Assembly: GCF_006345805.1 (NCBI RefSeq)
Contig: NC_043024.1
Span: 14,508,001-14,572,000 of the forward strand
From: Octopus sinensis
Lineage: Eukaryota
DNA length: 64,000 nucleotides
Reading direction: 5' to 3'
Under the pieces are notes generated by a model that was given only the letters and a program-made list of their open reading frames with translations, made no database searches and was not told where the DNA came from. Below are positions 297-63,543 of the stretch, in pieces. How positions within the stretch are numbered: position 1 is the stretch's first letter; the number at the start of each line of letters is the position of its first letter. The translations under genes were made by a program, and so were the position numbers.

Positions 297-332
297 TTAC
301 AAAAAAGATTAAATCACCTGTGTCTTCAGAAG
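297..332 (+). CDS. Micro-exon 36 nt, (V)[11 protein letters not shown]
   Basis: cttcccctttTCAG acceptor, AG|gtaagt donor, phase 1-1; unique sequence in the window. Confidence 0.6.
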
Positions 333-2513
333 GTAAGTAAATTTAACACTACAATTATTATAACAAAGGTCTTCACTGTTTATATTTATCTATTCTATCA
401 TATATAGTGAAGGCGCATGGCCCAGTGGTTAGAGCATCGAACTTACAATCGTGAGGTTGTGAGCTCGAATCCCCGACCGGGCTGCGTGTTGTGTTCTTGA
501 GCAAGACACTTTATTTCATGTTGCTCCAGTTCACTTAGCTGTAGAAATGAGTTGCGATGTCACAGGTGCCAAGCTGTATCAGTCTTTGCCTTTCTGTTGG
601 TGTGGAGAGGGGAGGCGGCTATGCATGAGCGACTGCTGGTCTTCCCTAAACAACCTTGCCAGGGCTTGTGCCTCGGAGGGTAACTTTCTAGGTATAACCC
701 CATGGTTTGTGTCATGACCGAAGGGGGTCTCAGAATTCTGTCATAGAATTTTAACTATTTTTTTAAGAAGATTTGTAGCTGTGTGGTAAAAAGATTGCTT
801 CTCAACCATGTGGTTCCAGGTTTAATAATAATCAACTTTATGGGACAAATATATAAAAGTTTAACAATAAAAAAAACTTATTATTTAGTTTGATTTTACA
901 TTAAACGCTCTTAAAGTTTTACTTTACAAATCAGGAAAAAAATCTCTCAATAAATATAAATTCGATTTTTTAAAAACTTTCATTCATCATTATCATCATC
1001 ATCATCGTTTAATGTCCGCTTTCCATGCTAGCATGCGTTGGACAATTTGATTGAGGACTGGCGAACCAGATGGCTGCACCAGGCTCCAATCTGATCTGGC
1101 AGAGTTCCTACAGCTGCATGCCCTTCCTAATGCCAACCACTCTGAGAGTGTAGTGGGCGATTTGACATGCCACCGGCACGAGGGCCAGTCAATCAGTACT
1201 GGCAACAGCCACGCTCACATGGTACTTTTTCTGTGCCACTTGCACAGGAGGCAGTCCAGTGGCACGGACAACAACTTCCTTTGAATGTTTTTTCACATGC
1301 CACCAGGACAAGTGCTAGAAAGGCAACACAGGTGACAATCACACTCGATTGGTGCTTTGTCCATGCTACCGGCACGGAGGCCAGCTTGTTGCTCTGGCAA
1401 CAATCTCACTCATATGGTACTCTTAGCGCTCCACTAGCACGGATGCCAGTCATCGAATTTGATTTCGATTTTGATATTATTTATTAATCAAATCTTCTCC
1501 AAGATTAAAGTATATACATGCCATATATTGAAGAACCCTATTAGCTATTAACGATACAAAAATGATATATAATACATATGAATTGCCATTTTCTTGCAGG
1601 ACCAGCTGTTACTCCATCAGGCAAGTACAATTCTACTGTTTGTTTAGTTATTAAAATGAAAGTATTTGAGGTGGTGAGCTGGCAGAATCGTTAGCATGCT
1701 GGACAAAATGCTTAGTGGTATTTCATCTATCGTTCTGTTCTGAGTTCAAATTCCGCTAAGGTCAACTTTACTTTTCATTCTTTTGGGGTCGATGAAATAA
1801 GTACCAGTTGAATACTGCATTGACACCCACATTTCAGTACCATGTAGCATACATGTTTATACAATAAGATTGATAGCATATGATAGAGGAATTCAAATCT
1901 AACATCTGTAATGTACATGACATTGACAATCAAATAAATACTATGCTTGCTCATATTTCTTTGCTTTTGTTTTTCTTTTTCATTCAACATATTATATAAT
2001 CTCATTCATTTCTTTCATTTGAACAGTTTTTTATTTTTTTGTCATTTTCTTCATTTCTGTTTTTTGTACATTTGTTTTACATGTGACTTTCATTTGTACA
2101 TTATACATGGATGTTTTTATAATTTTCTAACATAGTATATTATGTGATACATGATAATATAAGTAATGTACATCTGATATGGTACTACAGTGAGTAACTG
2201 GTATTTATCATCAGTACACATCTCACACTGGTATGTAAGTTTTAATATCAATATATGTAAGTCTAATGATGAAAACATTATCAGTCACACATACATAGTT
2301 TATATGTTTACTTTATAAACACCCAGTGTCATGTAAAGAGTTTCCTCAGGACACTATCCTGCAGCAAGTTGGTATATAAACAAACAACATACACTGTGTA
2401 TGTGCATCTGATGATATATATATGTGGATATATACTGCAAACACTCTATTCATTTTAAAAAAAAACAGTAGTACTTGGGAAATATTGGTGAATGTATGTA
2501 TGTATGTAACTAT

Positions 2514-2609
<96 letters not shown>

Positions 2610-5600
2610 AGCTGTCTGTCTGTCTGTTTGTCTCCCAAATGTTTTGAAAATATTTCTGAAATGCAGCCAAATATTCGATCTTTTTTTTTTTAAATTATGA
2701 ACAAATCTTTTTTGAAATTTTTTTCATACATTGAATTTTATGAACAGAAAAGTCATATTCAACTTTATGGGATTTATATATTTAGAAGTTTAGCAGTAAA
2801 AAAAAATGTTTAATATTTAGTTTGATTTTACATTAAACAATCCTAAAGTTTTGCTTTACACATCTGGAAAAACTCTCTCAATATAAATTCGTTTTCATTT
2901 TTAAAACTTCATTATTTATTATCAAATGTTCTCTAACATGCTATATATTGAAGAACCCTATAGCTATTAACGATACCAAAATGATATATAATACAAAATA
3001 AATTGCCATTTTCTTGCAGGGCCAGCTGTTACTCCATCAGGTAAGTACAATTCTACTGTTTGTTTAGTTATTAAAATGAAAGTGTTTAAGGTGGTGAGCT
3101 GGCAGAATCGTTAGCATGCAGGATAAAATGCTTAGTGGTATTTCATCAATTGCTACGTTCTGAGTTCAAATTCCGCTAAGGTCAACTTTACCTTTCATCC
3201 TTTTAGGGTCGATAAAATAAGTACCAGTTGAATACTGCATTGAGGCCCTCATTTCACTACCATGTAGCATACATGTTTATACAATAAGATGTTAGTTTCA
3301 CAAGACTTCTCTCTTGCATCTTACAACTCTTTTTTCCTATGGCTAATTTTTCTCTCAGAACATTTGCACTTTGTCATACATGCACACTAACGTTGCACAT
3401 ACATTAGAGTTTGTGCCAATGCTATCAAACCATCCAATGTGCTCTGCATTCAGGCCCACATCTCACTACCATGTAGCATACATATTTATACCCTAGGATG
3501 ATACTTTCAGCGAGAGGAAATGAAAGCAAAACTGTAATGTAATAGATAACATGGACAATCAAGAAATATATGCATTGTTCATAAGATGACCATCGGTTAG
3601 TTTGTCTTTTCTCACTCAACATATTACATAGAATGACAAACATCTTTTAAACTTTGAATATGTCAGCAGTTAATCCATTCATAATACATTTACTGTTACA
3701 CTTAAACAGAGATATTTTTAGTTTAAGCATTCAATGTAATTTTCCACATTTACTGAAATATTTTCATTAGATGGTAATTTGTTTTTCTAACACAGCATAA
3801 ATGTTATGTGATTGGAGGTAAATGGATATTTATGCTTTGATTTCAGAGGTAACTGGTACTATACGCCCTCACACTGGTATGTAAGTTTTAATATCAATAT
3901 ACGAAATGTCTTTATATTCTAAATATATATATATATACTGATTATAACTACAATGGACCATATTCTTCAACATGGAAGTAGTGGCAAAATTTTGGTTTCT
4001 ACTTTGGTTGTTTTCATTTTGTTTATGTTGAATTCATCTGTGAAGACAAAATAATCATCATATCAGGATCCTTTGAATTCTCTTGGCAGGATTTTTGCCA
4101 ATTTATGTCTACAGCAGTTGACAAATAATAACAAAAAAGGAAGTGAAGTAGAATCAGTACACGTGCTTTTATATTGTGAAACAACGCTCAAGAGATCCAA
4201 CACCATCTTGTTACACATTCTTTTCCACATCATGAATCTTGTGAAACTTAAATAGCATAAAAAATATCAGATGGTTTTGAAGAAAAATTAGAAGAATTTT
4301 AGCATTTCATTTTTATAGGGTGGAAAGATATTGTATGTAAAATGAAAAAGCACCAATTTTCAGCAGCACATATTCTAATTCTAAAAAATAATTTTTATAA
4401 TTCTCTTTCAGTTACATATTCTACAATCTCACCCATGCTAATTTATACCTTCTCTTATTGTCAGTCTGTCTGTCTCTCTCCCAAACAATTTGAAAATAGT
4501 TCTGAAATGCAGCCAAATATTCAATCGTATTTTTTTCTGAATTATAAACAAAACTTTTGTGAAATTTTTTTCATAGACTGAATTTTATGAACAGATGTCA
4601 TATTCAATTTTATGGGACATATATATTTAAAAGTTTAACAATAAAAAAATGTTTAATATTTAGTTTGATTTTACATTAAGCAATCCTAACGTTTTGCTTT
4701 TCAAATCTGGAAAAAGTCTGTCAATAAATATAAATTCGTTTTCATTTTTAAACTTTCATTATTTATTAATCAAATATTCTCCAACACCTTATACATTGAA
4801 GAACCATATTAGCTGTTAACGATACAGAAATGATATATAATTCAAAATAAATTGCCATTTTTTTTGCAGGACCAATTGTAACTAGCATAGCTGTTACTCC
4901 ATCAGGTAAGGACAATTCTACTGTTTGTTTAGTTATTAAAATGAAAGTATTTAGGGTGTTGAGCTGGCAGAATCGTTAGCATGCTGGGTGAAATGCTTAC
5001 CGGTATTTCGTCTGCCATTACGTTCTGAGTTCAAATTCCGCCGAGGTTGACTTTGCCTTTCATTCTTTTGGGGTTGATAAAATAAGTACTAGTTACGCAC
5101 TGGGGTCGATATACGACTTATTCCATTTGTCGGTGTTTGTCCTCTCTGTATTTAGCCACTTGTGGATAGTAAATAAATAGGTATTTCATCTATCTCTACG
5201 TTCTGAGTTCAAATTCCGCTAAGGTCAACTTTACCTTTCATCCTTTTGCGGTCGATAAAATAAGTACCAGTTGAATGTTGGATTGAGTCCCACATTTCAC
5301 TACCATGTAGCATACATGTTTATGCAATAAGCTGATGGTTTCACATGACCAAACTATCACATCACATCACATTACCAAACTATCAAAGTCTTCTCTCTTG
5401 CATCTTATAACTCCTTCCTCCTATGGCTAATTTTTCTCTCAGAACATTTGCACTTTGTCATACATGCACACTAACGTTGCACATACATAAGAGCCTGTTC
5501 CAATCCTATTAAACCATCCAATGTGCTCTGCATTCAGGCCCACATCTCACTACCATGTAGCATACATGTTTATACACTAGGATGATACTTTCAGATAAAA

Positions 5601-23600: not shown

Positions 23601-23631
23601 CTGTTTGTCTGTCTATGTATGTATGTAACTG

Positions 23632-23694
<63 letters not shown>

Positions 23695-38301: not shown

Positions 38302-38391
<90 letters not shown>

Positions 38392-39024: not shown

Positions 39025-39059
<35 letters not shown>

Positions 39060-42528: not shown

Positions 42529-42591
<63 letters not shown>

Positions 42592-54980: not shown

Positions 54981-55011
<31 letters not shown>

Positions 55012-55321
55012 ATGTATGTATGTATATATATTTATATATGTATGTATGTATATATATTTATATATATATGTATGTATGTATATATATTTATATATATATG
55101 TATGTATGTATATATATTTATATATATATATGTATGTATGTATATATATTTATATATATATGTATGTATGTATATATATTTATATATATGTATGTATGTA
55201 TATATATATTATATATGTATGTATGTATATATATATATATATGTATGTATGTATATATATATATGTGTATGTATGTATATATATATATGTATGTATGTAT
55301 ATATATATATATGTATGTATG

Positions 55322-55354
<33 letters not shown>

Positions 55355-55674
55355 GTATATATATATATATATAATGTATGTATGTGTATATATATATGTA
55401 TGTAGTGTATATATATATGTATGTATGTATGTGTATATATATATGTATGTATGTATGTGTATATATATATGTATGTATGTTATATATATGTATGTATGTA
55501 TGTGTATATATATATGTATGTATGTATGTGTATATATATATGTATGTATGTATGTGTATATATATATATATGTATGTATGTATGTGTATATATATATATA
55601 TATGTATGTATGTATGTGTATATATATATATGTATGTATATATATATATATAAATATGTATGCATATATATATG

Positions 55675-55715
<41 letters not shown>

Positions 55716-57167
55716 AGTTTGTATATATACCCAATAAGGTTCGAAAATCGATTAAAGTTGTGCATCATTTTTTTGGTATAGGCGCAGGAGTGGCTGTGTG
55801 GTAAGTAGCTTGCTTACAAACCACATGGTTCCAGGTTCAGTCCCACTGCATGGCACCTTGGGCAAGTGTCTTCTACTATAGCCTCGGGCCACCCAAAGCC
55901 TTGTGAGTGGATTTGGTAGATGGATACTGAAAGAAACCCATTGTATATATGTATACATCTATATGTGTATGTGTGTGTGTGTGTGTGTATAAATGTAGCA
56001 GTAATTTTATTCAGCTGAATACACATCATTGATTGGTTGAAATTACTGAAATAGGACTACTTTAACGTGAAATTACTTCGTAAATATAAGTTTTTCTCAA
56101 AAATGCTAAGAATAAAAGATGTTTTATATGATACATTCTACCAGTGTCCGAAGTTTGAAAGTGCTTAGTTACAAAAAATTATTTTTTAAATCTGTAGCTC
56201 CAAAGGTAAAGATCCCATTTTTACTATACACAGTTCTGATGGTTTGATCTGCAAATCTTGAAAAGAATCTCTGAATAAATATGATATTTTGATCACATTT
56301 ATTTAATCAAATCATACATAGAACACATTGAAGAATTGTATTAGTTATTAACAATACAAAAACATCATGTAATGCAAACAAATTGCCATTTTCTTGTAGG
56401 ACCAAGTGTATCTGGCATATCTCTTACTTCACCAGGTAAGTGCAGTTCTGCTGTATGTTTTGTGACTATCATGAAAGTATTACTGAATGTAATTTGTTAT
56501 TCTGTGATAGAATTTTTAGCTCAAGGTGGCGAGCAGGCAGAAACGTTAGCATGCTGGGCAAAATGCTTACGGGTAGTTCATCTGTCTTTACGTTCTGTGT
56601 TCAAATTCTGTGTAGGAGTGGCTGTGTGGTAAGTAGCTTGTTTACCAACCACATGGTTCCGGGTTCAGTCCCACTGCATGGCACCTTGGGCAAGTGTCTT
56701 CTATTATAGCCTCAGGCCGACTATTCAGTTTAATTTAAGAGACCTGCTGTTTTTGTCCTGTTTTTACATGTGAAGGTTTCTAAATAAAGATAAATACCTT
56801 ATAAAGTCATGTTTTTATTTTTGCTTTTGTTTTGGGGGTTTCACTTTAGTGACACCAATTACACATGGTACCAGAAATTTGCTTGGAGTTGCCAATATGG
56901 AAAAAGTGTTTTTTAAGTTTTTGAAAATTTTAAATAAAAAGGCATGTTTTTTAAAACTGTCTGTCACAGAGATGTGAAAAATGGCTTCTACCTGTTAATT
57001 TCAAATTTAACTTACCAAAGCTGAGGGTCTTTCAGCACTCCCCAAGTCTCTTAATGCACCCCCACTAGCACCCCTTTGCTCCAAAACACCCCCATCGAGC
57101 TCCAAATGATCCCTTTTGAGAACCTTTGTTTTAGACCACACTGACATATATTCTCTCTGTCTCTCTG

Positions 57168-57199
<32 letters not shown>

Positions 57200-60100
57200 A
57201 TATTCATTTGTAAGTGATTGATAAAAACATATGATACTTTCCCATTAATAAGTTTCTGGCACATATATTTAGATATTTATCATCAAAACAATTATTATTT
57301 CTTTATTGCCCACAAGGAGCTAAGCACAGAGGGTACAAACAACGACAGACAAAGGGATTAAGTCAATTACATCGACCCCAGTGCGTAACTGGTACTTAAT
57401 TTATCAACCCCGAAAGGATGAAAGGCAAAGTCGACTTCGGCAGAATTTGAACTCAGGGCGTAACGGCAGACGAAATACCTATTTCTTTATTACCGACAAG
57501 GGGCTAAACACAGAGAGGACAACCAAGGACAGACATAGGTATTAAGTCGATTACATCGACCCCAGTGCGTAACTAGTACTTAATTTATCGACCCCGAAAG
57601 GATGAAAGGCAAAGTCGACTTTGGCAGAATTTGAACTCAGAACGTAATGGCAGACAAAATACCGCTAAGCATTTCGCCCGGCGTGCTAACGTTTCTGCCA
57701 GCTCGCCACCTTAGCCACTGTTTTAACCATATTGTGCCTAGATGTACTACACTTTTTTTTAGGGATAACACCCTTTTCTTCAACATAATACGCAGCATTC
57801 ACCTCTGTCATCAAAGCAATTATTTCTGCTTAGTTCATCTTTATGATGCACAGTTCTGATGGTTTAGCCTGCAAATCTTGAGAAAAATCTCTAAATAAAC
57901 ATGGCATATTCTTTTTGCAAACAACTGTTATTTATTTGATCAAATCCTGCAGGTAACATTTAAAGAATTGTATTAGTTATTAACAATCCAAAAATAACAT
58001 ATAATGCAAACAAATTGCTATTTTCTTGCAGGACCAAGTGTATCTGGCATATCTCTCACTCCATCAGGTAAGTACACTTCTACTGTATGTTTAGTGATTA
58101 TTATAAAAGTGTTACTGAATGCAATTTGTGATTCTGTGATAGAATTTTTAGCTTATCATAAAGCGGTTTGAAATAATTATCAATAGATGTCTTGCAAACA
58201 ACTTGCACATGCAAGTGCTACCAGCCAAGAACTCTGCATACCGGAAGCCAGGTAGTGTATGGGGTCATCAGGAGAGAATGCTCACCATTTTGGGGCCTAC
58301 ATCTCGACGGCATCAATGTGCACCAGCCTCCTCACTGATATGAGGCTCTGCTTGCTAGATCAACTGGTTATCAAATAAAGCTCAATATTCTTCTGCCCAT
58401 TGCTCATCGTCTCTTTTTAACCAAATCCAGTGGCTAGCCTTCTCCACCGTAGTTTGGATATTGGTCACGGTGGGATTGACTTTACAATGAGTTAGGCCTA
58501 ACGATAACAACAGTCGTCTCACACTGTGTCCAACGAACCCTCTACATCCAACTTCGAAACATCAGAAACATTCAGCCTGGCTGGGTTCACTTGTGGTAAA
58601 ATGCTTACATATGGAGTTGGAACTGTTGTGGTGATAGACAGGAACATTGCAAAGCCAGCAGATCATACAATATTCATTTCTTTCAAGCTTTCACATGTCC
58701 TCTGCAATCACAACCCATGTTTCGTGACAGAGGAAATGTGAAAGCGTGACAGAAATGAATCTAGAATGCTCCACAAGATGAGCAATGTCAATTTGCATGT
58801 ATGACTGAATCTAAGCATCTTGAAAGAAAAACCAGGCATAATAAACATCAGATGTGGTGCACATGAGAGGCATCTGTGCTGGTATGGTCATGTATGTATG
58901 TATGTATACATTTCTGTACGCCACAAGGCTTTGGCTGGCCCAAGGCTGTAGTAAAAGACACTTGCCCAACGTAACCTGTCACACAGTAGGACTCAGTGCG
59001 TGAACCATGTGGTTGCTTAAACATTATAATTCTAAGAAAACTTTAAATATTCATTTCAAATATTGGCTTTATATATAACGGGAAGGTTTATGAAAATAAA
59101 CAAAAGACGAAGGCAGGTGGAGTAGAAGCAAACTAATGTATTAGTATGGCGCTCAGGAATAGAAATGGAACAAGTTTTTACATTTTGAGCGTACGCTCTT
59201 CGACAGAAAGATACACAGAAAAAACAAGGAGAGAAAAAATGCGTGTAGGAGCTAACGATCTATCATGGCGTCCTGACCAAGTGGTTGAGCACTCCACAGA
59301 CACATGTACCCTTATATATATATATGTGTGGAGGCGCAATGGACCAGTGGTTAGGGCAGTGGACTTGTGGTCGTAGGATCGCGGTTTCAATTCCCAGACC
59401 GGGCATTGTGAGTGTTTATTAAGCAAAAACACCTAAAGCTGCACGAGGCTCCAGCTGGGGATGGTGGTGAACCCTGCTGTACTCTTTCACCACAACTTTC
59501 TCTCACTCTTTCTTCCTGTTTCTGTTGTACCTGTATTTCAAAGGGCCAGCCTTATCACACTCTGTGTTATGCCGAATCTCCCCAAGAACTACGTTAAGGG
59601 TACATGTGTCTGTGGAGTGCTCAGCCACTTGCACATTAATAAATGAGTTGCGACGTCACAGGTGCCAAGCTGTATCAGCCTATTCCTTTCCCTTTGATAA
59701 CACTGCTTGCGTAGAGAGGGGAGGCTGGTATGCATGGGCGACTGCTGGTCTTCCATAAACAACCTTGCCCAGACTTATGCCTCAGAGGGTATCTTTCAAA
59801 TATTCATGACCGAATGGTGTCACATATATATCATCAAAATAAGCAACAAGAATAACATCGGTAATTTGGTATGATCGTTTCGCACTACATCATTTTATTA
59901 AATGTTGTAAGTATTACAACAGTTTTAAAATGCTGAGCACTCATCAACCATTAATAGAGGTTTTCCATTAATACATAATTTTCATATCAATTGATAACAT
60001 TATAGAGAAGGTAGATATATAGACAAAGATGTGGATTTAAATTTTAAGAACATTTAAGGTAGTGGAGTTTATCAACTGACTGGATAATATTCAGTTGCTA

Positions 60101-62282
60101 TGAACTGCTAGAAGATTCTGAGAAGAATGGACAATTGAAAGGAGACAAAAAAGATTTTCTATTTATAGAAATAGGGGTGAAATAGATGTCAAAGTTCCAT
60201 ATAAAAAATTTAGGTACATGTCACATTATTTTAATCAAAGTTTTTCAAAGAATGCATCTGTACATAATTAGTTAGTGAAAATTTATGTAATTTATTAACT
60301 GTGTAAAATTGTATAATACAAATAAATTATTTCTCTTTTGCAGCTGCAAGCACAGGTACTCCAACAGTCTCTTCAGCAGGTTTGTATATTTGATACTAAA
60401 CCATATGTTTAGTCAATATAATGAAAGTACTTACTAGGTGTCTAAGTTTACCTTGTCTGTCACAGAATATAACTTATCAGTTTTGAATTAGTTTTAGTTA
60501 GGTTCATACAATCTAAAAGAAACAAAAAGAAAATTCAAAAGTAACATTTGAACTTTACTTGTTGGTGTTGGCTGTAAATGTTCACCTCTTGTAGAACCAA
60601 GACTGAGGAAATTTTAGTTGGTGTTACTGAAAACTATATTCTCCAAAACGACCAGATCCAAGAAACAACTGACACTACCTTAGTCTCGTTGGCTCTAGTA
60701 GAACATGTGACAAATGGCTGAACACTGAAATATCACCAACTGAATTAAAGATTACTTATATAAATATGAAGAGTCAACTTAGAGCTGAACAGCAGGTCGG
60801 GATCTTAGATAATCTGAATTCAATATTCAATAGTGCCGGTGGCACGTAAAAAGCACCATCCGATCGTGGCCTTTTGCCAGCCTCGTCTGGCACCTGTGCA
60901 GGTGGCACATAAAAAGCACCCATTACACTCTCGGAGTGGTTGGCGTTAGGAAGGGCATCTAGCTGTAGAAACGCTGCCAGATGTACTACACTTTTTTTTA
61001 GGGATAACACCCTTTTCTTCAAAATAATACGCAGCATTCACCTCTGTCATCAAAGCAATTATTTCTGCTTAGTTCATCTTTATGATGCACAGTTCTGATG
61101 GTTTAGCCTGCAAATCTTGAGAAAAATCTCTAAATAAACATGGCATATTCTTTTTGCAAACAACTGTTATTTATTTGATCAAATCCTGCAGGTAACATTT
61201 AAAGAATTGTATTAGTTATTAACAATCCAAAAATAACATATAATGCAAACAAATTGCTATTTTCTTGCAGGACCAAGTGTATCTGGCATATCTCTCACTC
61301 CATCAGGTAAGTACACTTCTACTGTATGTTTAGTGATTATTATAAAGTGTTACTGAATGCAATTTGTGATTCTGTGATAGAATTTATAGCTTATCATAAA
61401 GCGGTTTGAAATAATTATCAATAGATGTCTTGCAAACAACTTGCACATGCAAGTGCTACCAGCCAAGAACTCTGCATACTGGAAGCCAGGTAGTGTATGG
61501 GGTCATCAGGAGAGAATGCTCACCGTTTCGAGGCCTACCTCTCGACAGCATCAATGTGCACCAGCCACCTCACTGATATGAGGCTCTGCTTGCTAGATCA
61601 GCTGTTTATCAAATAAAGCTCAATATTCTTCTAGCCATCACTCATCGTCTCTTTTTAACCAAATTCAGTGGCTAGCCTTCTCCACTGTAGTTTGGATATT
61701 GGTCACGGTGGGATTGACTTTACGATGAGTTAGGCCTAACGATAACAACAGTCGTCTCACACTGTGTCCAACGAACCCTCTACATCCAACTTCGAAACAT
61801 CAGAACATTCAGCCTGGCTGGGTTCACTTGTGGTAAAATGCTACATATGGAGTTGGAACTGTTGTGGTGATAGACAGGAACATTGCAAAGCCAGCAGATC
61901 ATACAATATTCATTTCTTTCAAGCTTTCACATGTCCTCTGCAATCACAACCCATGTTTCACGACAGAGGAAATGTGAAAGCGTGAAGAAATGAATCTAGA
62001 TGTTCCACAAGATGAGCAATGTCAATTTGCATGTATGACTGAATCTAAGCATCTTGAGAGAAAAACCAGGCATAATAAACATCAGATGTGGTGCACATGA
62101 GAGGCATCTGTGCTGGTATGGTCATGTATGTATGTATGCATTTCTGTACGCCACAAGGCTTTGGCTGGCCCAAGGCTGTAGTAAAAGACACTTGCCCAAC
62201 GTAACCTGTCACACAGTAGGACTCAGTGTGTGAACCATGTGGTTGCTTAAACATTATAATTCTAAGAAAACTTTAAATATTC

Positions 62283-62319
<37 letters not shown>

Positions 62320-63543
62320 CGGGAAGGTTTATGAAAATAAACAAAAGACGAAGGCAGGTGGAGTAGAAGCAAACAATGTATTAGTATGGCGCTCAGGAAT
62401 AGAAATAGAACAAGTTTTTACATTTTGAGCGTACGCTCTTCGACAGAAAGATACACAGAAAAAACAAGGAGAGAAAAAAATGCGTGTAGGAGCTAACGAT
62501 CTATCATGGCGTCCTGACCAAGTGGTTGAGCACTCCACAGACCCATGTACCCTTATATATATATATGTGGAGGCGCAATCGACCAGTGGTTAGGGCAGTG
62601 GACTTGTGGTCGTAGGATCGCGGTTTCAATTCCCAGACCGGGCATTGTGAGTGTTTATTAAGTGAAAACACCTAAAGCTGCACGAGGCTCTTTCTTCCTG
62701 TTTCTGTTGTACCTGTATTTCAAACGGCCAGCCTTGTCACACTCTGTGTCATGCTGAATCTCCCTGAGAAGTACGTTAAGAGTACACATGTCTGTGGAGT
62801 ACTTAGCCACTTGCACATTAATAAATGAGTTGCGACGTCACAGGTGCCAAGCTCTATCAGCCTATTCCTTTCCTTCGATAACACTGTTGCGTAGAGAGGG
62901 GAGGCTGGTATGCATGGGCGACTGCTGGTCTTCCATAAACAACCTTGCCCAGACTTATGCCTCAGAGGGTATCTTTCAAATATTCATGACCGAATGGGGT
63001 CACATATATATCATCAAAATAAGCAACAAGAATAACTTCAGTAATTTGGTATGATCGTTTCACACTACATCATTTTATTAAATGTTGTAAGTATTACAAC
63101 AGTTTTAAAATGCTGAGCACTCATCAACCATTAATGGAGGTTTTCCATTAATACATAATTTTCATATCAAGTGATAACATTATAGAGAAGGTAGATATAT
63201 AGACAAAGATGTGGATTTAAATTTTAAGAACAAGGTAACTGACTGAATAATATTCAGTTGCTATGAACTGCTAGAAGATTCTGAGAAGAATGGGCAATTG
63301 AAAGGAGACAAAAAAGATTTTCTATTTATAGAAATAGGGGTGAAATAGATGTCAAAGTTCCATATAAAAAAATTTAGGTACATGTCACATTATTTTAATC
63401 AAAGTTTTTCAAAGAATGCATCTGTACATAATTAGTTAGTGAAAATTTATGTAATTTATTAACTGTGTAAAATTGTATAATACAAATAAATTATTTCTCT
63501 TTTGCAGCTGCAAGCACAGGTACTCCAACAGTCTCTTCAGCAG
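297..63543 (+). CDS. Internal portion of a multi-exon mucin-like (Pro/Thr/Ser-rich) protein gene built from 41 intact symmetric phase-1 micro-exons (21 x 36 nt, 16 x 30 nt, 4 x 21 nt)
   Basis: Recurrent polypyrimidine-(C/T)AG acceptors and GT(GC) donors bound 21/30/36-nt segments. All end in G, are stop-free in phase 1 and translate to related PTS-rich peptides. No start or terminal exon was identified. Confidence 0.85.
407..731 (+). mobile_element. tRNA-derived SINE family B
   Basis: gaaggcgcatggcccagtggttagagc (A box) ... gctcgaatcccc (B box) ... cttgagcaagacacttt central domain. Confidence 0.8.
991..1470 (-). mobile_element. RTE-tail short retroposon (SINE or LINE 3' UTR fragment)
   Basis: catcatcatcgtttaatgtccgctttccatgctagc, same as the LINE tail at 33712. 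Confidence 0.75.
1600..1620 (+). CDS. Micro-exon 21 nt, GPAVTPS (GC donor)
   Basis: ttttcttgcag / CAG|gcaagt. Confidence 0.65.
2512..2606. repeat. (TATC)n microsatellite
   Basis: Direct inspection; shorter allelic forms in paralogous units (e.g. 23625-23693). Confidence 0.95.
3020..3040 (+). CDS. Micro-exon 21 nt, GPAVTPS
   Basis: ttttcttgcag / gtaagt. Confidence 0.8.
3847..3876 (+). CDS. Micro-exon 30 nt, [10 protein letters not shown]
   Basis: tttgatttcag / gtatgt. Confidence 0.8.
4870..4905 (+). CDS. Micro-exon 36 nt, [12 protein letters not shown]
   Basis: ttttttgcag / gtaagg. Confidence 0.8.
5888..5917 (+). CDS. Micro-exon 30 nt, [10 protein letters not shown]
   Basis: tttgattacag / gtatgt. 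Confidence 0.8.
6138..6158 (+). CDS. Micro-exon 21 nt, GPAVTPS
   Basis: ttttcttgcag / gtaagg. Confidence 0.8.
7189..7619 (-). mobile_element. Short non-autonomous Helitron-like element
   Basis: Minus strand A|TCtctatatataa...tgtctgtctgtg 5' end; cccaggcaacgccggg hairpin then CTAG|T. Confidence 0.7.
7930..8095 (-). mobile_element. Degenerate RTE LINE 3' fragment
   Basis: Minus-strand [31 protein letters not shown] resembles [32 protein letters not shown] of the 34-kb LINE. Confidence 0.45.
8713..8742 (+). CDS. Micro-exon 30 nt, [10 protein letters not shown]
   Basis: tttgatttcag / gtacgt. Confidence 0.8.
9185..9220 (+). CDS. Micro-exon 36 nt, [12 protein letters not shown]
   Basis: ttctgttgcag / gtaagt. 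Confidence 0.8.
10054..10083 (+). CDS. Micro-exon 30 nt, [10 protein letters not shown]
   Basis: tttgattacag / gtatgt. Confidence 0.8.
11404..11439 (+). CDS. Micro-exon 36 nt, [12 protein letters not shown]
   Basis: ttctgttgcag / gtaagt. Confidence 0.8.
12276..12305 (+). CDS. Micro-exon 30 nt, [10 protein letters not shown]
   Basis: tttgattacag / gtacgt. Confidence 0.8.
13635..13670 (+). CDS. Micro-exon 36 nt, [12 protein letters not shown]
   Basis: ttctgttgcag / gtaagt. Confidence 0.8.
14502..14531 (+). CDS. Micro-exon 30 nt, [10 protein letters not shown]
   Basis: tttgattacag / gtacgt. Confidence 0.8.
15346..15381 (+). CDS. Micro-exon 36 nt, [12 protein letters not shown]
   Basis: ttttcttgcag / gtaagt. 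Confidence 0.8.
15808..15843 (+). CDS. Micro-exon 36 nt, [12 protein letters not shown]
   Basis: ttttcttgtag / gtaagt. Confidence 0.8.
16385..16420 (+). CDS. Micro-exon 36 nt, [12 protein letters not shown]
   Basis: ttttgttgcag / gtaagt. Confidence 0.8.
17258..17287 (+). CDS. Micro-exon 30 nt, [10 protein letters not shown]
   Basis: tttgatttcag / gtacgt. Confidence 0.8.
18557..18592 (+). CDS. Micro-exon 36 nt, [12 protein letters not shown]
   Basis: ttttcttgcag / gtaagt. Confidence 0.8.
19018..19053 (+). CDS. Micro-exon 36 nt, [12 protein letters not shown]
   Basis: ttttcttgtag / gtaagt. Confidence 0.8.
19594..19629 (+). CDS. Micro-exon 36 nt, [12 protein letters not shown]
   Basis: ttttgttgcag / gtaagt. 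Confidence 0.8.
20463..20492 (+). CDS. Micro-exon 30 nt, [10 protein letters not shown]
   Basis: tttgatttcag / gtacgt. Confidence 0.8.
21667..21702 (+). CDS. Micro-exon 36 nt, [12 protein letters not shown]
   Basis: ttttcttgcag / gtcagt. Confidence 0.75.
22227..23347 (+). mobile_element. 5'-truncated copy of the 1.6-kb Helitron
   Basis: Homologous to 30420-31573; ends gtcataatgCTAG|T. Confidence 0.7.
23886..23921 (+). CDS. Micro-exon 36 nt, [12 protein letters not shown]
   Basis: ttttcttgcag / gtaagt. Confidence 0.8.
24526..24554 (+). pseudogene. Frameshifted copy of the 30-nt EVTGT exon (29 nt); pseudo-exon or consensus error
   Basis: aggtactggt instead of aggtaactggt; splice sites intact; flanks have other 1-nt deletions. 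Confidence 0.6.
24766..24788 (+). pseudogene. Frameshifted copy of the 21-nt GPAVTPS exon (23 nt); pseudo-exon or consensus error
   Basis: gttactctccatcag carries an extra TC; splice sites intact. Confidence 0.6.
25668..25697 (+). CDS. Micro-exon 30 nt, [10 protein letters not shown]
   Basis: tttgattacag / gtatgt; GGT>TGT gives Cys. Confidence 0.75.
25840..27347 (+). mobile_element. 5'-truncated copy of the 1.6-kb Helitron
   Basis: Homologous to 30030-31573; ends acgacgggtcataacgCTAG|T. Confidence 0.75.
27864..27899 (+). CDS. Micro-exon 36 nt, [12 protein letters not shown]
   Basis: ttttcttgcag / gtaagt. Confidence 0.8.
28498..28527 (+). CDS. Micro-exon 30 nt, [10 protein letters not shown]
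   Basis: tttgatttcag / gtatgt. Confidence 0.8.
28749..28769 (+). CDS. Micro-exon 21 nt, GPAVTPS (GC donor)
   Basis: ttttcttgcag / CAG|gcaagt. Confidence 0.65.
29648..29677 (+). CDS. Micro-exon 30 nt, [10 protein letters not shown]
   Basis: tttgattacag / gtatgt. Confidence 0.8.
29987..31573 (+). mobile_element. Non-autonomous Helitron-like element (1,587 bp), complete copy
   Basis: A|TC tatatata 5' end, tgtctgtctgtgtg subterminal microsatellite, GC-rich subterminal stem-like motif, CTAG|T 3' end. Confidence 0.75.
32114..32149 (+). CDS. Micro-exon 36 nt, [12 protein letters not shown]
   Basis: ttttcttgcag / gtaagt. Confidence 0.8.
32999..33028 (+). CDS. Micro-exon 30 nt, [10 protein letters not shown]
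   Basis: tttgatttcag / gtacgt. Confidence 0.8.
33568..33599 (+). pseudogene. Donor-less exon copy [10 protein letters not shown] followed directly by TAA (pseudo-exon or alternative terminal/poison exon)
   Basis: tttgattacag acceptor; homologous to exon 48382-48411 but lacks G|gtatgg; reads ...AAA ACT TAA. Confidence 0.6.
33712..35618 (-). mobile_element. 5'-truncated RTE-clade LINE, inactivated (RT C-terminal half, 3' UTR, (GAT)n tail)
   Basis: Minus-strand EKAFDRVPR...[26 protein letters not shown] (TGG>TAG stop), [17 protein letters not shown]; (cat)n at 33712-33735. Confidence 0.92.
35639..35770. repeat. 132-bp spacer-less palindrome (66-bp arms, one mismatch)
   Basis: Centre tttc|gaaa between 35704 and 35705; arms checked base by base. 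Confidence 0.95.
35919..36014. repeat. (TA)n microsatellite
   Basis: Direct inspection. Confidence 0.95.
36016..36400 (+). mobile_element. SINE family A, full length
   Basis: ggagtggctgtgtggtaag ... internal (TA)/(TG) tract ... aatgactgaaacaagtaaaagag. Confidence 0.85.
36693..37224 (+). mobile_element. Short non-autonomous Helitron-like element
   Basis: (TA)n-aaaactg start; ends cccgagcaacaccgggcgatactgCTAG|T; contains an internal duplicated segment. Confidence 0.65.
37436..37700 (+). mobile_element. 3' fragment of an RTE/BovB-like LINE ORF
   Basis: Translates [52 protein letters not shown], typical of the RTE ORF C-terminus. Confidence 0.75.
37966..38290 (+). mobile_element. SINE family B-related
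   Basis: tggcttagtggttaggg...gagttcgcttccc...ccttgagcaagacacttt. Confidence 0.75.
38297..38403. repeat. (TA)n microsatellite
   Basis: Direct inspection. Confidence 0.95.
39060..40570. repeat. Tandem repeat, about 372-bp unit x4 plus a partial copy
   Basis: ggctgatcgaattggccgccgattt starts at about 39060, 39431, 39804, 40175 and 40548. Confidence 0.95.
40673..41440. repeat. C-rich minisatellite, about 150-bp unit x5 with alternating variants
   Basis: ccaccattataggtgtctactctttgaacccccc recurs five times. Confidence 0.95.
41443..41685 (+). mobile_element. RTE-tail short retroposon
   Basis: taaaaagcacc...ggcgttaggaagggcatccagc...ttaaacgatgatgat. Confidence 0.8.
43213..43628 (-). mobile_element. 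SINE family A, full length
   Basis: Reverse-complement match to 36016-36400. Confidence 0.85.
43990..44740 (+). mobile_element. Degenerate mariner transposase remnant interrupted by a SINE
   Basis: After SINE removal, ATG at 44176 reads [31 protein letters not shown]...[10 protein letters not shown]...EPRCGRP (HTH); LHHDNAPTH near 44706. Confidence 0.75.
44202..44424 (-). mobile_element. tRNA-derived SINE (same family as the array-embedded SINE) with a 15-bp TSD
   Basis: GATTGAGCAAATATA at 44187-44201 and 44425-44439. Confidence 0.9.
44783..45175 (+). mobile_element. SINE family A, full length
   Basis: Match to 36016-36400. Confidence 0.85.
45223..45258 (+). CDS. Micro-exon 36 nt, [12 protein letters not shown]
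   Basis: tctcttttgtag / gtttgt; flanks homologous to those of exon 60344-60379. Confidence 0.7.
45740..45967 (+). mobile_element. SINE family A, 3' half
   Basis: gtcgcttgacaacc...aaacaagtaaaagag. Confidence 0.8.
46426..46455 (+). CDS. Micro-exon 30 nt, [10 protein letters not shown]
   Basis: tttttggttacag / gtatga; downstream intron homologous to EVTGT-type introns (tttaatatcaa-atatgaaat). Confidence 0.75.
46506..47071 (-). mobile_element. Internally deleted mariner (566 bp) with TIRs and TA target duplication
   Basis: Left TA|tcgggttgtctggaaagtttgtgccgattt, right aaatcggcatgaactttccggacaacccaa|TA; minus-strand [28 protein letters not shown] catalytic motif. Confidence 0.9.
47430..47606 (+). 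mobile_element. SINE fragment, same family
   Basis: gggcgaaatgcttagc...gggttcaaattccgccgag...aagtaccagttacgcactgg. Confidence 0.75.
47608..47800. mobile_element. Right-end fragment of the same Tc2/pogo-like MITE
   Basis: Homologous to 49890-50076, ends tactcgaggagttacgg|TA. Confidence 0.75.
48022..48324 (+). mobile_element. RTE-tail short retroposon
   Basis: Same 3' end with (GAT)n tail. Confidence 0.8.
48382..48411 (+). CDS. Micro-exon 30 nt, [10 protein letters not shown]
   Basis: ttctttgattgcag / gtatgg; same conserved downstream intron. Confidence 0.75.
48569..48797. mobile_element. piggyBac-like MITE, degenerate copy
   Basis: TTAA|cacttttgttatc ... ggtatcaaaaggt|TTAA; homologous to 48829-49049. 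Confidence 0.65.
48829..49049. mobile_element. piggyBac-like MITE (221 bp)
   Basis: TTAA|cccttttgttac ... gtaacgaaaggg|TTAA. Confidence 0.8.
49185..49552 (+). mobile_element. SINE family A, degenerate
   Basis: ggctgtgtggtaagaagcttgc...gagttcagtccc...gtggatttgg. Confidence 0.7.
49565..50076. mobile_element. Non-autonomous Tc1/mariner-superfamily element (Tc2/pogo-like MITE, 512 bp)
   Basis: TA|ccgtaaatcctcgagtata ... tatactcgaggatttacgg|TA terminal inverted repeats. Confidence 0.8.
50245..50558 (+). mobile_element. RTE-tail short retroposon
   Basis: Same 3' end with (GAT)n tail. Confidence 0.8.
50712..51071 (+). mobile_element. RTE-tail short retroposon
   Basis: Same 3' end with (GAT)n tail. 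Confidence 0.8.
51139..51168 (+). CDS. Micro-exon 30 nt, [10 protein letters not shown]
   Basis: gctcttttacag / gtatgt; paralogous to exon 53794-53823 including flanks. Confidence 0.7.
51376..51760 (-). mobile_element. SINE family B-related with a 13-bp TSD
   Basis: TATTACCATATCT at 51363-51375 and 51761-51773. Confidence 0.85.
52040..52455 (-). mobile_element. SINE family A, full length
   Basis: Reverse-complement match. Confidence 0.85.
52725..53142 (+). mobile_element. SINE family A, full length
   Basis: Match to 36016-36400. Confidence 0.85.
53794..53823 (+). CDS. Micro-exon 30 nt, [10 protein letters not shown]
   Basis: cactttttttacag / gtatat. Confidence 0.7.
54011..54596 (-). mobile_element. 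Short non-autonomous Helitron-like element
   Basis: Minus strand A|TCtatatatataaaactc 5' end; gagccgggcaatactgCTAG|T 3' end. Confidence 0.65.
54862..55728. repeat. Complex (TA)n/(TATG)n/(TG)n microsatellite, about 870 bp
   Basis: Direct inspection. Confidence 0.95.
55778..55990 (+). mobile_element. SINE family A, 5' half
   Basis: ggagtggctgtgtggtaag...aaagaaaccc. Confidence 0.8.
56400..56435 (+). CDS. Micro-exon 36 nt, [12 protein letters not shown]
   Basis: ttttcttgtag / gtaagt. Confidence 0.8.
56522..56722 (+). mobile_element. Nested SINE fragments (array-type SINE head fused to family A head)
   Basis: ggtggcgagcaggcagaaacgttag...gttcaaattctg then ggagtggctgtgtggtaag. Confidence 0.7.
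57292..57711 (-). mobile_element. Tandem/partially duplicated copy of the same SINE family
   Basis: Two successive ...aggatgaaaggcaaagtcgac...gaactcag blocks. Confidence 0.8.
58032..58067 (+). CDS. Micro-exon 36 nt, [12 protein letters not shown]
   Basis: ttttcttgcag / gtaagt. Confidence 0.8.
59328..59822 (+). mobile_element. SINE family B-related composite
   Basis: gtggaggcgcaatggaccagtggttaggg...ggtttcaattccc; duplicated at 62567. Confidence 0.75.
60344..60379 (+). CDS. Micro-exon 36 nt, [12 protein letters not shown]
   Basis: tctcttttgcag / gtttgt. Confidence 0.75.
60832..60983 (+). mobile_element. RTE-tail fragment truncated at the duplication junction
   Basis: gtgccggtggcacgtaaaaagcacc...acgctgccaga then joins tgtactacac. 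Confidence 0.75.
61271..61306 (+). CDS. Micro-exon 36 nt, [12 protein letters not shown]
   Basis: ttttcttgcag / gtaagt. Confidence 0.8.
62567..63001 (+). mobile_element. SINE family B-related composite (duplicate, with internal deletion)
   Basis: Copy of 59328-59822 lacking about 59 bp after gcacgaggctc. Confidence 0.75.
63508..63543 (+). CDS. Micro-exon 36 nt, [12 protein letters not shown]
   Basis: tctcttttgcag / gtttgt. Confidence 0.75.

What the first reader, a model, noticed from the sequence alone, without database searches (positions are those of the whole stretch)
297..63543. Hidden gene: a mucin-like protein encoded entirely by 41+ micro-exons across 63 kb
Seen: 41 segments of exactly 21, 30 or 36 nt, each between a polypyrimidine-AG and a GT/GC donor, stop-free in phase 1. 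They concatenate to 440 aa of Pro/Thr/Ser/Val/Gly-rich repeat (…[46 protein letters not shown]…) and none is detected by the ORF track. Established: many gel-forming and membrane mucins encode their PTS repeat domain within one large exon as a VNTR. Inference: here each repeat unit is its own exon, so an O-glycosylated domain grows by exon+intron duplication. Such genes are easily missed or mis-annotated.
Basis: partly seen in the sequence, partly recalled or inferred. Interest (0 to 1): 0.92.

Follow-up and report, generated by a model that had tools for sequence, protein, structure and literature searches.

The report
Octopus mucin linker made of micro-exons
The 41 tiny in-frame exons are really there, but they are not a gene of their own: they encode one Ser/Thr/Pro-rich spacer between two folded domains of a very large octopus mucin-like gene, and the spacer grew by copying exon-plus-intron units, a rare way of encoding mucin repeats that has been described before.

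Summary
Observation confirmed. The window (Octopus sinensis, C28:14,508,001-14,572,000, + strand) holds exactly 41 segments of 21, 30 or 36 nt. All have an AG acceptor, 39 a GT and 2 a GC donor, and all are phase 1-1. They join into 1,320 nt / 439-440 aa (S 20%, T 17%, P 14%).

Interpretation partly right. This is not a stand-alone gene made only of micro-exons. It is part of one roughly 165-kb linker between two discoidin-fold domains of a gene of at least 356 kb. That gene probably also includes VWD/C8 modules 147-212 kb upstream, and a 21-nt repeat array of more than 24 kb lies downstream.

The O. bimaculoides orthologue (XP_052833088.1, "uncharacterized") joins the same exon types in the same order at the same boundaries, but has one A-B pair where this window has about 30 exons. 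The O. sinensis and O. vulgaris models seen here are fragments.

Growth by exon+intron duplication is shown: tandem 2.2-4.2-kb units are 93-98% identical. Exon and splice cores vary half as much as introns (p=0.012). pN/pS is at least 1.

No RNA from this species was available, so use of all the young copies is unproven. Precedents are chicken Muc13 and lophotrochozoan F5/8-domain mucins. Verdict: new variant of a known kind.

The parts
297..332 (+). 36-nt exon, [12 protein letters not shown]; first linker exon inside the window, not the first of the gene
   Evidence: cag|..|gtaagt. Matches TKEIKPSVSSA of O. bimaculoides XP_052833088.1 at 7/11. Preceded by phase-1 exons at -5030 and -2103.
1600..1620 (+). 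A21 exon, GPAVTPS (GC donor)
   Evidence: An A36 exon with a 15-nt in-frame deletion.
2215..2230 (+). decayed B-type copy, 16 nt, not 3n
3020..3040 (+). A21 exon, GPAVTPS
3847..3876 (+). B30 exon, [10 protein letters not shown]
   Evidence: 8/9 to EVTGPIRPHT of the orthologue
4870..4905 (+). A36 exon, [12 protein letters not shown]
5888..5917 (+). B30 exon, [10 protein letters not shown]
6138..6158 (+). A21 exon, GPAVTPS
8713..8742 (+). B30 exon, [10 protein letters not shown]
9185..9220 (+). A36 exon, [12 protein letters not shown]; start of the 2.2-kb [A36-B30] tandem units
10054..10083 (+). B30 exon, [10 protein letters not shown]
11404..11439 (+). A36 exon, [12 protein letters not shown]
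12276..12305 (+). B30 exon, [10 protein letters not shown]
13635..13670 (+). A36 exon, [12 protein letters not shown]
14502..14531 (+). B30 exon, [10 protein letters not shown]
15346..15381 (+). A36 exon, [12 protein letters not shown]; start of the 3.2-kb [A36,A36,A36,B30] units
15808..15843 (+). A36 exon, [12 protein letters not shown]
16385..16420 (+). A36 exon, [12 protein letters not shown]
17258..17287 (+). B30 exon, [10 protein letters not shown]
18557..18592 (+). A36 exon, [12 protein letters not shown]
19018..19053 (+). A36 exon, [12 protein letters not shown]
19594..19629 (+). A36 exon, [12 protein letters not shown]
20463..20492 (+). B30 exon, [10 protein letters not shown]
21667..21702 (+). 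A36 exon, [12 protein letters not shown] (donor gtcagt)
23886..23921 (+). A36 exon, [12 protein letters not shown]; start of the ~4-kb units; closest to APNISGTAVTLS of the orthologue
24526..24554 (+). B-type copy with a 1-nt deletion (29 nt). A tandem acceptor at 24528 would give an in-frame 27-nt exon GTGTIHPHT.
24766..24788 (+). A21-type copy with a 2-nt insertion (23 nt): out of frame, probable pseudo-exon or assembly error
25668..25697 (+). B30 exon, [10 protein letters not shown]
27864..27899 (+). A36 exon, [12 protein letters not shown]
28498..28527 (+). B30 exon, [10 protein letters not shown]
28749..28769 (+). A21 exon, GPAVTPS (GC donor)
29648..29677 (+). B30 exon, [10 protein letters not shown]
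32114..32149 (+). A36 exon, [12 protein letters not shown]
32999..33028 (+). B30 exon, [10 protein letters not shown]; last of the young A/B block
33568..33597 (+). diverged B-type copy without a GT donor (pseudo-exon)
34198..35670 (-). non-LTR retrotransposon fragment (RVT_1, PHD) inside the 12.2-kb intron; not part of the coding sequence
45223..45258 (+). 36-nt exon, [12 protein letters not shown] (C-type, donor gtttgt)
46426..46455 (+). 30-nt exon, [10 protein letters not shown]
   Evidence: 6/9 to GITGSKGPET of the orthologue
48382..48411 (+). 30-nt exon, [10 protein letters not shown]
51139..51168 (+). 30-nt exon, [10 protein letters not shown]
53794..53823 (+). 30-nt exon, [10 protein letters not shown] (weak donor gtatat)
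56400..56435 (+). A36v exon, [12 protein letters not shown]
58032..58067 (+). A36v exon, [12 protein letters not shown]; first of five compared 3.25-kb [A36v-C36] units that run on past the window end (A36v copies to +74178)
   Evidence: 11/11 to the orthologue
60344..60379 (+). C36 exon, [12 protein letters not shown]
   Evidence: 11/11 to the orthologue
61271..61306 (+). A36v exon, [12 protein letters not shown]
63508..63543 (+). C36 exon, [12 protein letters not shown]; last exon in the window, the array goes on

Best explanation
The window lies inside one very large secreted, mucin-like gene of Octopus sinensis on the + strand of C28.

The protein alternates discoidin-fold (F5/8-C-like) domains of about 133 aa with Pro/Thr/Ser-rich linkers. 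Each domain is built from two ordinary exons. The linker between domain D' (window -12.8 to -7.9 kb) and the next domain (+152.4 to +156.8 kb) is about 165 kb of DNA. Its coding sequence consists only of symmetric phase 1-1 micro-exons of 21-42 nt, and the 41 in the window are its first part.

Each micro-exon starts with the last two bases and ends with the first base (always G) of a split codon. Any exon can therefore be added, lost or skipped without changing the frame.

The linker grew by unequal tandem duplication of 2.2-4.2-kb segments, each carrying 2-4 exons with their introns. The young A/B block at 1600-33028 is probably specific to the O. sinensis/vulgaris lineage.

Shown: the anatomy, the duplication mode, collinearity with the sister-species model, and the fold of the flanking domains.

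Inferred: that the VWD/C8 modules 147-212 kb upstream belong to the same transcript (which would make it a gel-forming-type mucin); that the linker is O-glycosylated; and that all or most of the young copies are spliced in.
For: (1) Anatomy. 41/41 have an AG acceptor, 39 a GT and 2 a GC donor, all have 3n length, all end in G, and the frame is open.

(2) Orthologue. The only database relative of the 439-aa peptide is P0001. Its cluster holds XP_052833088.1 (O. bimaculoides LOC106881592, 1,260 aa, gene span 158 kb).
- Its linker 3 reads TKEIKPSVSSA|APNISGTAVTLS|EVTGPIRPHT|GITGSKGPET|...|[12 protein letters not shown]|VPRIAGPSVTPT|...|[12 protein letters not shown]|GITGPNCTHT|APPGSPISST|GPSVSAAGVTPS.
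- The units are 10 or 12 aa, collinear with the exons here, with up to 11/11 identity and the same junction residues.
- P0001 and P0002 differ by exactly two 10-aa units (GITGPNCTHT, APPGSPISST). These correspond to two 30-nt exons here, at +136640 and +137922, as expected of cassette exons.

(3) Flanking domains map to this locus on the same strand. D' lies at -12782..-12498 and -8093..-7917 (84% and 64% identity). The next D lies at 152438-152701 and 156638-156772. The last domain lies at C28:14746992 and 14795485. Phase-1 boundaries join the domains and linker exons.

(4) O. vulgaris CAI9741633.1 joins exon +144023 (GPSVSGAAVTPA) to the D exon.

(5) Duplication. Whole units, introns included, are 93-98% identical. 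Between older families only the exon and 60-80 nt either side still align.

(6) Constraint. Pairwise divergence is lowest at -20..-1, in the exon and at +1..+6, and rises outward. Among young units, substitutions affect 12/692 core columns against 332/9506 deep-intron columns (odds ratio 0.49, p=0.012).

(7) Domain fold. AlphaFold2 with a 10-sequence alignment gives pLDDT 86.4. Foldseek's top hits are neuropilin b1/b2, factor VIII C2, DDR2 and retinoschisin, with probability 1.0.

(8) Mucin context.
- Patella vulgata 'mucin-2-like' XP_055959230.1 has VWD x3, C8, TIL and LDLa, then an array of the same domain with PTS linkers.
- In G000, VWD and C8 hits lie on the same strand at C28:14.296-14.361 Mb.
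- The same VWD/C8-then-domain-array layout recurs at C9:75.05-75.23 Mb and C2:30.77-30.86 Mb.
- Lophotrochozoan mucin-like proteins are known to carry F5_F8 domains (PMC4948705).
Against: No transcript or protein evidence from O. sinensis itself could be reached.

The O. sinensis RefSeq models XP_036370448/9 stop in a terminal exon at about -4.0 kb, upstream of the window.

The O. bimaculoides model has one A-B pair where the window has about 30 exons. Many young copies could therefore be unused, or its model could be collapsed.

pN/pS among copies is 2.3 (A36) and 1.2 (B30), so there is no purifying selection on the residues.

The copies are so young (2-7% divergence) that intact splice sites and frames in most of them are close to what neutral decay would still leave. 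This is my rough estimate, not a computed test.

Four copies are already broken.

No Cys-knot hit was found near the 3' end of this gene. Linkage of the VWD/C8 exons to the same transcript is not shown.
Confidence: 0.75

Rival explanations
1. The gene is real, but the young A/B block (about 31 exons, 1600-33028) is mostly silent. A recent segmental amplification copied one or two true exons with their introns, and most copies are skipped (pseudo-exons). The mature linker would then resemble the much shorter O. bimaculoides one.
For: The O. bimaculoides model has a single A-B pair. Units are 93-98% identical including introns. pN/pS is at least 1. Four copies have already decayed. The O. sinensis RefSeq model ends before the array.
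Against: Substitutions are halved in exon and splice cores compared with introns among these very units, and the divergence valley is centred on the splice sites. 31 of 35 copies keep AG, GT or GC, and 3n length. The 15-nt and other length changes that survived are in frame.
Confidence: 0.2
2. This is a stand-alone 'hidden' gene encoded entirely by micro-exons within the 63 kb.
For: No long ORF and no domain exon lies inside the window.
Against: There is no start or terminal exon in the window. The exon at 297 continues a phase-1 chain from exons at -5030 and -2103 and from domain D'. The array continues beyond 63543 to +144058 and into the next domain. The orthologous protein has the linker between two domains.
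Confidence: 0.03
3. This is non-coding tandem DNA. The exon-like look is inherited from one ancestral unit and has no function.
For: There are few founder families and high copy identity.
Against: Units match annotated proteins of two other octopus species at exact boundaries, in order. Eight or nine diverged families all keep 3n length, phase 1 and PTS composition. Constraint is seen on the splice cores.
Confidence: 0.03
4. The anatomy is the same, but the linker is an unglycosylated flexible or elastic spacer (like elastin or titin PEVK), not a mucin domain.
For: Val, Ile, Ala and Gly make up about 37% of residues, and S+T is 37%, modest for a mucin. The gene architecture (phase 1-1 cassette exons with split Gly codons) is that of elastin (own knowledge).
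Against: The context is VWD/C8 modules plus relatives named mucin-2-like. A TTSIPSA-type repeat array lies in the same locus. Pro sits next to Ser/Thr throughout.
Confidence: 0.12

Closest known systems
Octopus bimaculoides LOC106881592 (XP_052833088.1, 'uncharacterized protein', 1,260 aa, gene span 158 kb)
   Same: Orthologue. It has the same domain order and the same linker unit types in the same order, and its flanking domains are 78-88% identical.
   Different: It has one A-B pair where this window has about 30 exons. The model lacks a signal peptide and VWD part, so it is probably partial. No publication mentions it.
Chicken (and zebrafish) Muc13 PTS domain (Lang, Hansson, Samuelsson 2006, PMC1552070)
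   Same: Each PTS repeat unit is one exon. The authors already proposed that PTS length could be set by alternative splicing.
   Different: Muc13 is a SEA/transmembrane mucin with at least 12 exons of 20 aa (60 nt). Here the exons are 7-14 aa, there are more than 80 in the 254 kb examined, there are several unit families, and the gene is of VWD/discoidin type. The two are not homologous.
Lophotrochozoan gel-forming mucin-like proteins with F5_F8 domains (Lang et al. 2016, PMC4948705), e.g. Patella vulgata 'mucin-2-like' XP_055959230.1
   Same: VWD-C8-TIL modules followed by repeated discoidin-like domains separated by PTS linkers. The Patella domain aligns with the octopus one (E=9e-5, 28% identity).
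   Different: The Patella linkers are 20-60 aa, and its gene structure was not examined. The octopus linker spans about 165 kb. Pfam's F5_F8_type_C model does not detect the octopus domain.
Classical mucin VNTR in one large exon (e.g. human MUC genes; PMC13345508, PMC1552070)
   Same: PTS repeats of variable number. The same locus seems to hold one such array: a 21-nt unit over more than 24 kb.
   Different: In the window the repeat unit is the exon plus its intron, and the period is kilobases rather than tens of bases.
Elastin and titin-PEVK genes (own knowledge, not tested here)
   Same: Long runs of short cassette exons, all 3n and in the same phase, with split codons at the junctions. They expanded by exon+intron duplication and are used variably by splicing.
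   Different: Different proteins and composition; they are not glycoproteins. No homology.
Schistosome micro-exon genes, MEGs (bioRxiv 10.1101/2023.06.21.545858; PMC4350168)
   Same: Symmetric micro-exons (3-81 nt) separated by long introns in secreted proteins.
   Different: MEGs are small whole genes with non-repetitive micro-exons. Here the micro-exons are tandem repeats within a giant modular gene. No homology.

Membership tests
Gel-forming (VWD-type) mucin / lophotrochozoan mucin-like protein | Long Pro/Thr/Ser-rich (PTS) region | tested here: met
   439 aa with S 20.3%, T 17.1%, P 13.9%. Further PTS linkers lie up- and downstream. This rests on composition only.
Gel-forming (VWD-type) mucin / lophotrochozoan mucin-like protein | N-terminal VWD-C8(-TIL) modules in the same gene | tested here: inconclusive
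   VWD hits at C28:14296409, 14352970 and 14356175, and C8 hits at 14320081, 14336144 and 14360777, all on the + strand, 147-212 kb upstream of the window. The same layout occurs at the C9 and C2 paralogues and in Patella XP_055959230.1. One transcript joining them is not shown, and the DNA could not be fetched.
Gel-forming (VWD-type) mucin / lophotrochozoan mucin-like protein | F5_F8 (discoidin) domains within the PTS region (characteristic of Lophotrochozoa per PMC4948705) | tested here: met
   Met by fold: model pLDDT 86.4, and Foldseek top hits are neuropilin b1/b2, FVIII C2 and DDR2 with probability 1.0 and TMq up to 0.67. Cys residues sit near both ends of the domain. Not met by sequence: the Pfam HMM gives no hit.
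Gel-forming (VWD-type) mucin / lophotrochozoan mucin-like protein | C-terminal cystine knot | tested here: not met
   No PF00007 hit on C28 near 14.7-14.9 Mb at E<=1. One hit lies after the C2 paralogue, at C2:30895759. A six-frame search can miss a split domain.
Gel-forming (VWD-type) mucin / lophotrochozoan mucin-like protein | Dense O-glycosylation and secretion | not testable with these tools
   No glycosylation predictor or proteome is available, and the signal peptide was not located.
PTS domain with one repeat per exon (chicken Muc13 type) | Exon boundaries coincide with repeat units | tested here: met
   Each 7-, 10- or 12-aa unit is one exon, and the units of the orthologous protein have the same lengths.
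PTS domain with one repeat per exon (chicken Muc13 type) | Transcript evidence that the exons are joined | tested here: inconclusive
   The only evidence is gene models of O. bimaculoides (two versions that differ by two whole units) and O. vulgaris. Their RNA support could not be inspected, and there is no O. sinensis RNA.
Schistosome-type micro-exon gene (MEG) | Small secreted protein whose coding sequence is mostly non-repetitive symmetric micro-exons | tested here: not met
   Symmetric micro-exons: yes. But they are tandem repeats inside a gene of at least 356 kb that also has ordinary domain exons.

The most novel reading that the evidence does not exclude
The array of more than 80 frame-neutral micro-exons is used combinatorially. 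Octopus tissues or individuals would set the length and unit composition of a mucin linker by cassette splicing, on top of copy-number change by unequal crossing-over. One gene would then combine two ways of encoding PTS repeats: kilobase-period micro-exon arrays and a 21-nt array of more than 24 kb in one exon. The conserved 60-100 nt either side of each exon would be the signals that allow 21-36-nt exons to be recognised.
Probability: 0.2. Interest if true: 0.8.

Novelty: new variant of a known kind. Interest (0 to 1): 0.55.

Why it matters
Mucin repeat domains are usually described as sitting in one large exon (PMC13345508, PMC1552070), and their length is thought to change only by recombination. 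Chicken Muc13 was the noted exception.

This octopus gene is a far more extreme case. It has at least 80 symmetric exons of 7-14 codons spread over more than 200 kb, with recent kilobase-scale duplications still visible. That makes two ideas directly testable: that PTS length can be tuned by splicing, and how the spliceosome recognises long runs of near-identical micro-exons.

It is also a practical warning. Of the three octopus annotations seen, two break this locus into fragments, and one calls a gene on the wrong strand of the repeat array. Mucin repertoires of molluscs are probably under-counted.

Tried and rejected
- Protein search with the 439-aa peptide gave one hit only. A 104-aa A/B peptide gave none, so there is no direct transcript-derived match for the young block.
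- Profile search with the domain alignment added only two short octopus fragments and one unrelated TSP1 protein.
- Pfam on the orthologue and its fragments gave nothing significant. A PDB sequence search with the domain profile gave nothing. The fold came only from structure prediction with an alignment, because the single-sequence model failed (pLDDT 39).
- Looking up the O. sinensis RefSeq protein's contig failed because the record is withheld. O. bimaculoides DNA was not delivered because the gene is longer than 100 kb.
I could not check whether the paralogues use micro-exons, nor see the gene ends.
- Literature searches for the accessions, and for octopus plus micro-exon, gave nothing.
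- dN/dS as a coding test was uninformative: pN/pS is at least 1, as expected for PTS sequence.
- A tRNA scan of the window gave 0 genes.
- I first considered that the Na_Ca_ex 'gene' next to the O. vulgaris model marks the gene's end. I rejected this because it overlies the 21-nt array on the opposite strand.

Full report
WHAT IS IN THE WINDOW

The window is G000:C28:14,508,001-14,572,000, + strand. The genome is 2.72 Gb in 13,516 contigs. Two RefSeq proteins of Octopus sinensis that match the locus sit on a contig of exactly C28's length, 20,263,137 bp, so the genome is O. sinensis.

Regex scans, BLAST of exon+flank queries and a splice-site/frame scan recover 41 segments between 297 and 63543:
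- 21 of 36 nt, 16 of 30 nt and 4 of 21 nt.
- All have an AG acceptor behind a pyrimidine tract; 39 have a GT and 2 a GC donor.
- All end in G, the first base of a split codon.

Joined, they give 1,320 nt and a stop-free 439-aa peptide (S 20%, T 17%, P 14%, V 12%, G 10%).

The segments fall into a few families:
- A36 ([12 protein letters not shown]).
- A21 (GPAVTPS), which is A36 minus 15 nt.
- B30 ([10 protein letters not shown]).
- C36 ([12 protein letters not shown]).
- A36v ([12 protein letters not shown]).
- Four diverged 30-nt exons, one diverged C-type 36-nt exon at 45223, and the exon at 297.

Four further copies are decayed: 2215 (16 nt), 24526 (29 nt, rescuable by a tandem acceptor two bases on), 24766 (23 nt) and about 33568 (no donor).

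IT IS NOT A GENE OF ITS OWN

I fetched 60 kb upstream and 130 kb downstream. The same kind of exon continues on both sides:
- 42-nt exons (PSSPTPYLGxSPT, SSVSMPYSESTVT) from -53.4 to -23.3 kb.
- A 33-nt exon at -19.9 kb.
- A36v/C36 units up to +74 kb.
- PRIAGPSVTPT-type and other exons up to +144 kb.
- A 42-nt exon at +158 kb.

All 31 genome-wide matches of an A36 exon with its flanks lie on C28:14.509-14.652 Mb, + strand.

THE ORTHOLOGUE

The only relative of the 439-aa peptide among 5.8 billion proteins is P0001. Its 90% cluster holds XP_052833088.1, 'uncharacterized protein LOC106881592' of O. bimaculoides. That protein is 1,260 aa and its gene spans 158 kb.

The protein alternates PTS stretches with four globular domains of about 130 aa. 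Its third PTS stretch is a chain of 10- and 12-aa units: TKEIKPSVSSA, APNISGTAVTLS, EVTGPIRPHT, GITGSKGPET, ..., [24 protein letters not shown], ..., [44 protein letters not shown].

These units are collinear with the exons found here, up to 11/11 identical, and with the same junction residues. The two O. bimaculoides models (P0001, P0002) differ by exactly two 10-aa units. These correspond to two 30-nt exons here, at +136640 and +137922, which is what cassette exons would give.

The flanking domains map to this locus:
- D' at -12782..-12498 and -8093..-7917.
- The next D at 152438-152701 and 156638-156772.
- More D copies at -58 to -48 kb and further up, to C28:14,439,462.
- The last domain at C28:14,746,992 and 14,795,485.

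Reading the junctions shows one continuous phase-1 chain: D' ends ...GCLMK+G, then a 33-nt exon VIPVDFETPYQ at -5030, a 30-nt exon DYFGTVHSEY at -2103, then exon 297. The D module itself is phase 1-1 with an internal phase-0 intron.

So the window is the first 64 kb of a linker of about 165 kb between two consecutive domains, in a gene of at least 356 kb.

WHAT THE DOMAINS AND THE GENE ARE

The domain has no Pfam or PDB sequence match. A single-sequence model was useless. With a 10-sequence alignment, AlphaFold2 gave pLDDT 86.4. Foldseek then placed it firmly in the discoidin / F5/8 type C fold: neuropilin b1/b2, factor VIII C2, DDR2 and retinoschisin, with probability 1.0 and TMq 0.56-0.67.

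An exhaustive HMMER search found few relatives. They are octopus fragments, a 5,655-aa Macrostomum protein with 24 copies, and Patella vulgata 'mucin-2-like' XP_055959230.1. The Patella protein has a signal peptide, VWD x3, C8, TIL and LDLa, followed by an array of this domain separated by short PTS linkers.

In G000, VWD and C8 hits lie on the + strand at C28:14.296-14.361 Mb, upstream of the domain array. The same layout of VWD/C8 followed by a domain array recurs at C9:75.05-75.23 Mb and C2:30.77-30.86 Mb. The C2 copy is followed by a Cys-knot hit; none is seen for the C28 gene.

Lang et al. 2016 state that the F5_F8 domain is characteristic of lophotrochozoan mucin-like proteins (PMC4948705). 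The gene is therefore best filed as a lophotrochozoan VWD-type mucin-like gene. Linkage of the VWD part and glycosylation remain inferred.

HOW THE ARRAY GREW, AND WHETHER IT IS CONSTRAINED

Neighbouring units align over their whole length, introns included:
- [A36-B30], 2.2 kb, three copies, 97% over full length between the first two; the third is shorter (1.7 kb) and aligns in two blocks at 97% and 92%.
- [A36,A36,A36,B30], 3.2 kb, two copies, 95-97%.
- About 4-kb units, two copies, 93%.
- [A36v-C36], 3.25 kb, five compared units, 95-98%.

Between older families only the exon and 60-80 nt either side still align. A SINE-like element sits about 45 nt after 21 of 22 A-type exons, so it was part of the unit before amplification.

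Pairwise divergence among copies is lowest at the acceptor (-20..-1), in the exon and at the donor (+1..+6), and rises outward. Among the young units, substitutions hit 12/692 core columns against 67/1975 near-flank and 332/9506 deep-intron columns (p=0.026 and 0.012). With gapped columns included the contrast is 2.3% against 8.7%.

Residues are not conserved: pN/pS is 2.3 for A36 and 1.2 for B30. That is usual for PTS sequence. What is kept is splicing, frame and composition.

The young copies differ by only 2-7%, so their intactness alone is weak evidence.

WHAT REMAINS OPEN

No RNA from this species could be reached. The O. sinensis RefSeq models XP_036370448/9 contain only D' (plus the -5030 exon in one isoform). 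They end in a terminal exon GLSYCKHMCQV* at about -4.0 kb. This is either a real short isoform or a truncated model.

O. vulgaris CAI9741633.1 starts inside the intron before exon +144023 and joins that exon to the D exon. The O. bimaculoides model has one A-B pair against about 30 exons here. Either the block expanded in the O. sinensis/vulgaris lineage, which its low internal divergence favours, or most copies are skipped, or that model is collapsed. I give 0.75 to the overall explanation and 0.2 to the rival that most young copies are silent.

COMPARISON WITH WHAT IS KNOWN

The statement that mucin PTS repeats lie in one large exon is in the literature (PMC13345508; PMC1552070). The exception is also known. 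[quoted passage not shown] Zebrafish Muc13 is similar (PMC1552070).

The architecture also parallels elastin and titin PEVK (own knowledge) and, superficially, schistosome micro-exon genes.

What is new here is the degree and the setting:
- 7-14-codon exons.
- At least 80 of them in the 254 kb examined.
- Several unit families.
- Duplications still in progress.
- A VWD/discoidin-type invertebrate mucin-like gene that also seems to carry a classical repeat array.

No paper mentions the locus. Verdict: new variant of a known kind, interest 0.55.

Noticed in passing
outside the window: window coordinates ~169,670 to beyond 194,000 (C28:14,677,670-14,702,000+; loci L047-L049): A tandem array of a 21-nt unit (CAACAACATCAATACCATCAG; about 330 copies in L048 alone), more than 24 kb long. 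It is entered through a phase-1 acceptor. One + frame reads ATTSIPS/TTSIPTT, with open stretches up to 2,968 aa and single-base frame slips between them. It looks like a classical big-exon mucin VNTR in the same locus, or a minisatellite. It is open in several frames on both strands, so coding is not proven.
   Followed up: partly
L050 31,100-34,395 (O. vulgaris OX597840.1: 6,392,368-6,426,762): The orthologous O. vulgaris stretch is collinear with G000 at 95-99% identity and carries the same 21-nt array. The public annotation calls a 645-aa gene with a Na_Ca_ex mark on the minus strand of that array, probably an artefact.
   Followed up: partly
window 1665-1815 and 20 further places (e.g. 3085, 4955, 9265, 11484, 13715, 15413, 23967, 27944, 32198, 56524): A SINE-like element of about 150 nt sits about 45 nt downstream of 21 of 22 A-type exons, always on the + strand. 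It was in the unit before amplification. It could have promoted unequal crossing-over or could contribute splicing signals.
   Followed up: partly
window 34198-35670, minus strand: Fragments of a non-LTR retrotransposon (RVT_1 E=1e-12; PHD finger) inside the 12.2-kb intron between exons 32999 and 45223.
   Followed up: yes
outside the window: window coordinates about -4041..-4007 (L036): A phase-1 terminal exon, GLSYCKHMCQV-stop, is used by both O. sinensis RefSeq isoforms of LOC118768321. It lies in the intron between the -5030 and -2103 linker exons. It may be an alternative 3' end giving a one-domain product, or a truncated model.
   Followed up: partly
G000 C2:30.77-30.90 Mb and C9:75.05-75.23 Mb (+ strand): Paralogous loci with VWD/C8 hits followed by dozens of copies of the same discoidin-like domain, only about 2.1-4 kb apart. 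C2 ends with a Cys-knot hit. Their linkers must be short, so the 165-kb linker of the C28 gene is exceptional within the family.
   Followed up: partly
window 24526-24554: The 1-nt deletion in this B-type copy can be compensated by the tandem acceptor CAGAG, which gives exon 24528-24554 (27 nt, in frame). The neighbouring 23-nt copy at 24766 has no such rescue.
   Followed up: no
window 2515-2608, 54,840-55,780 and elsewhere: Long simple repeats in the introns ((TCTA)n; (TATG/TATA)n-type arrays that read as CVY/IYI 'ORFs'). They account for the long spurious ORFs in the ORF list.
   Followed up: no
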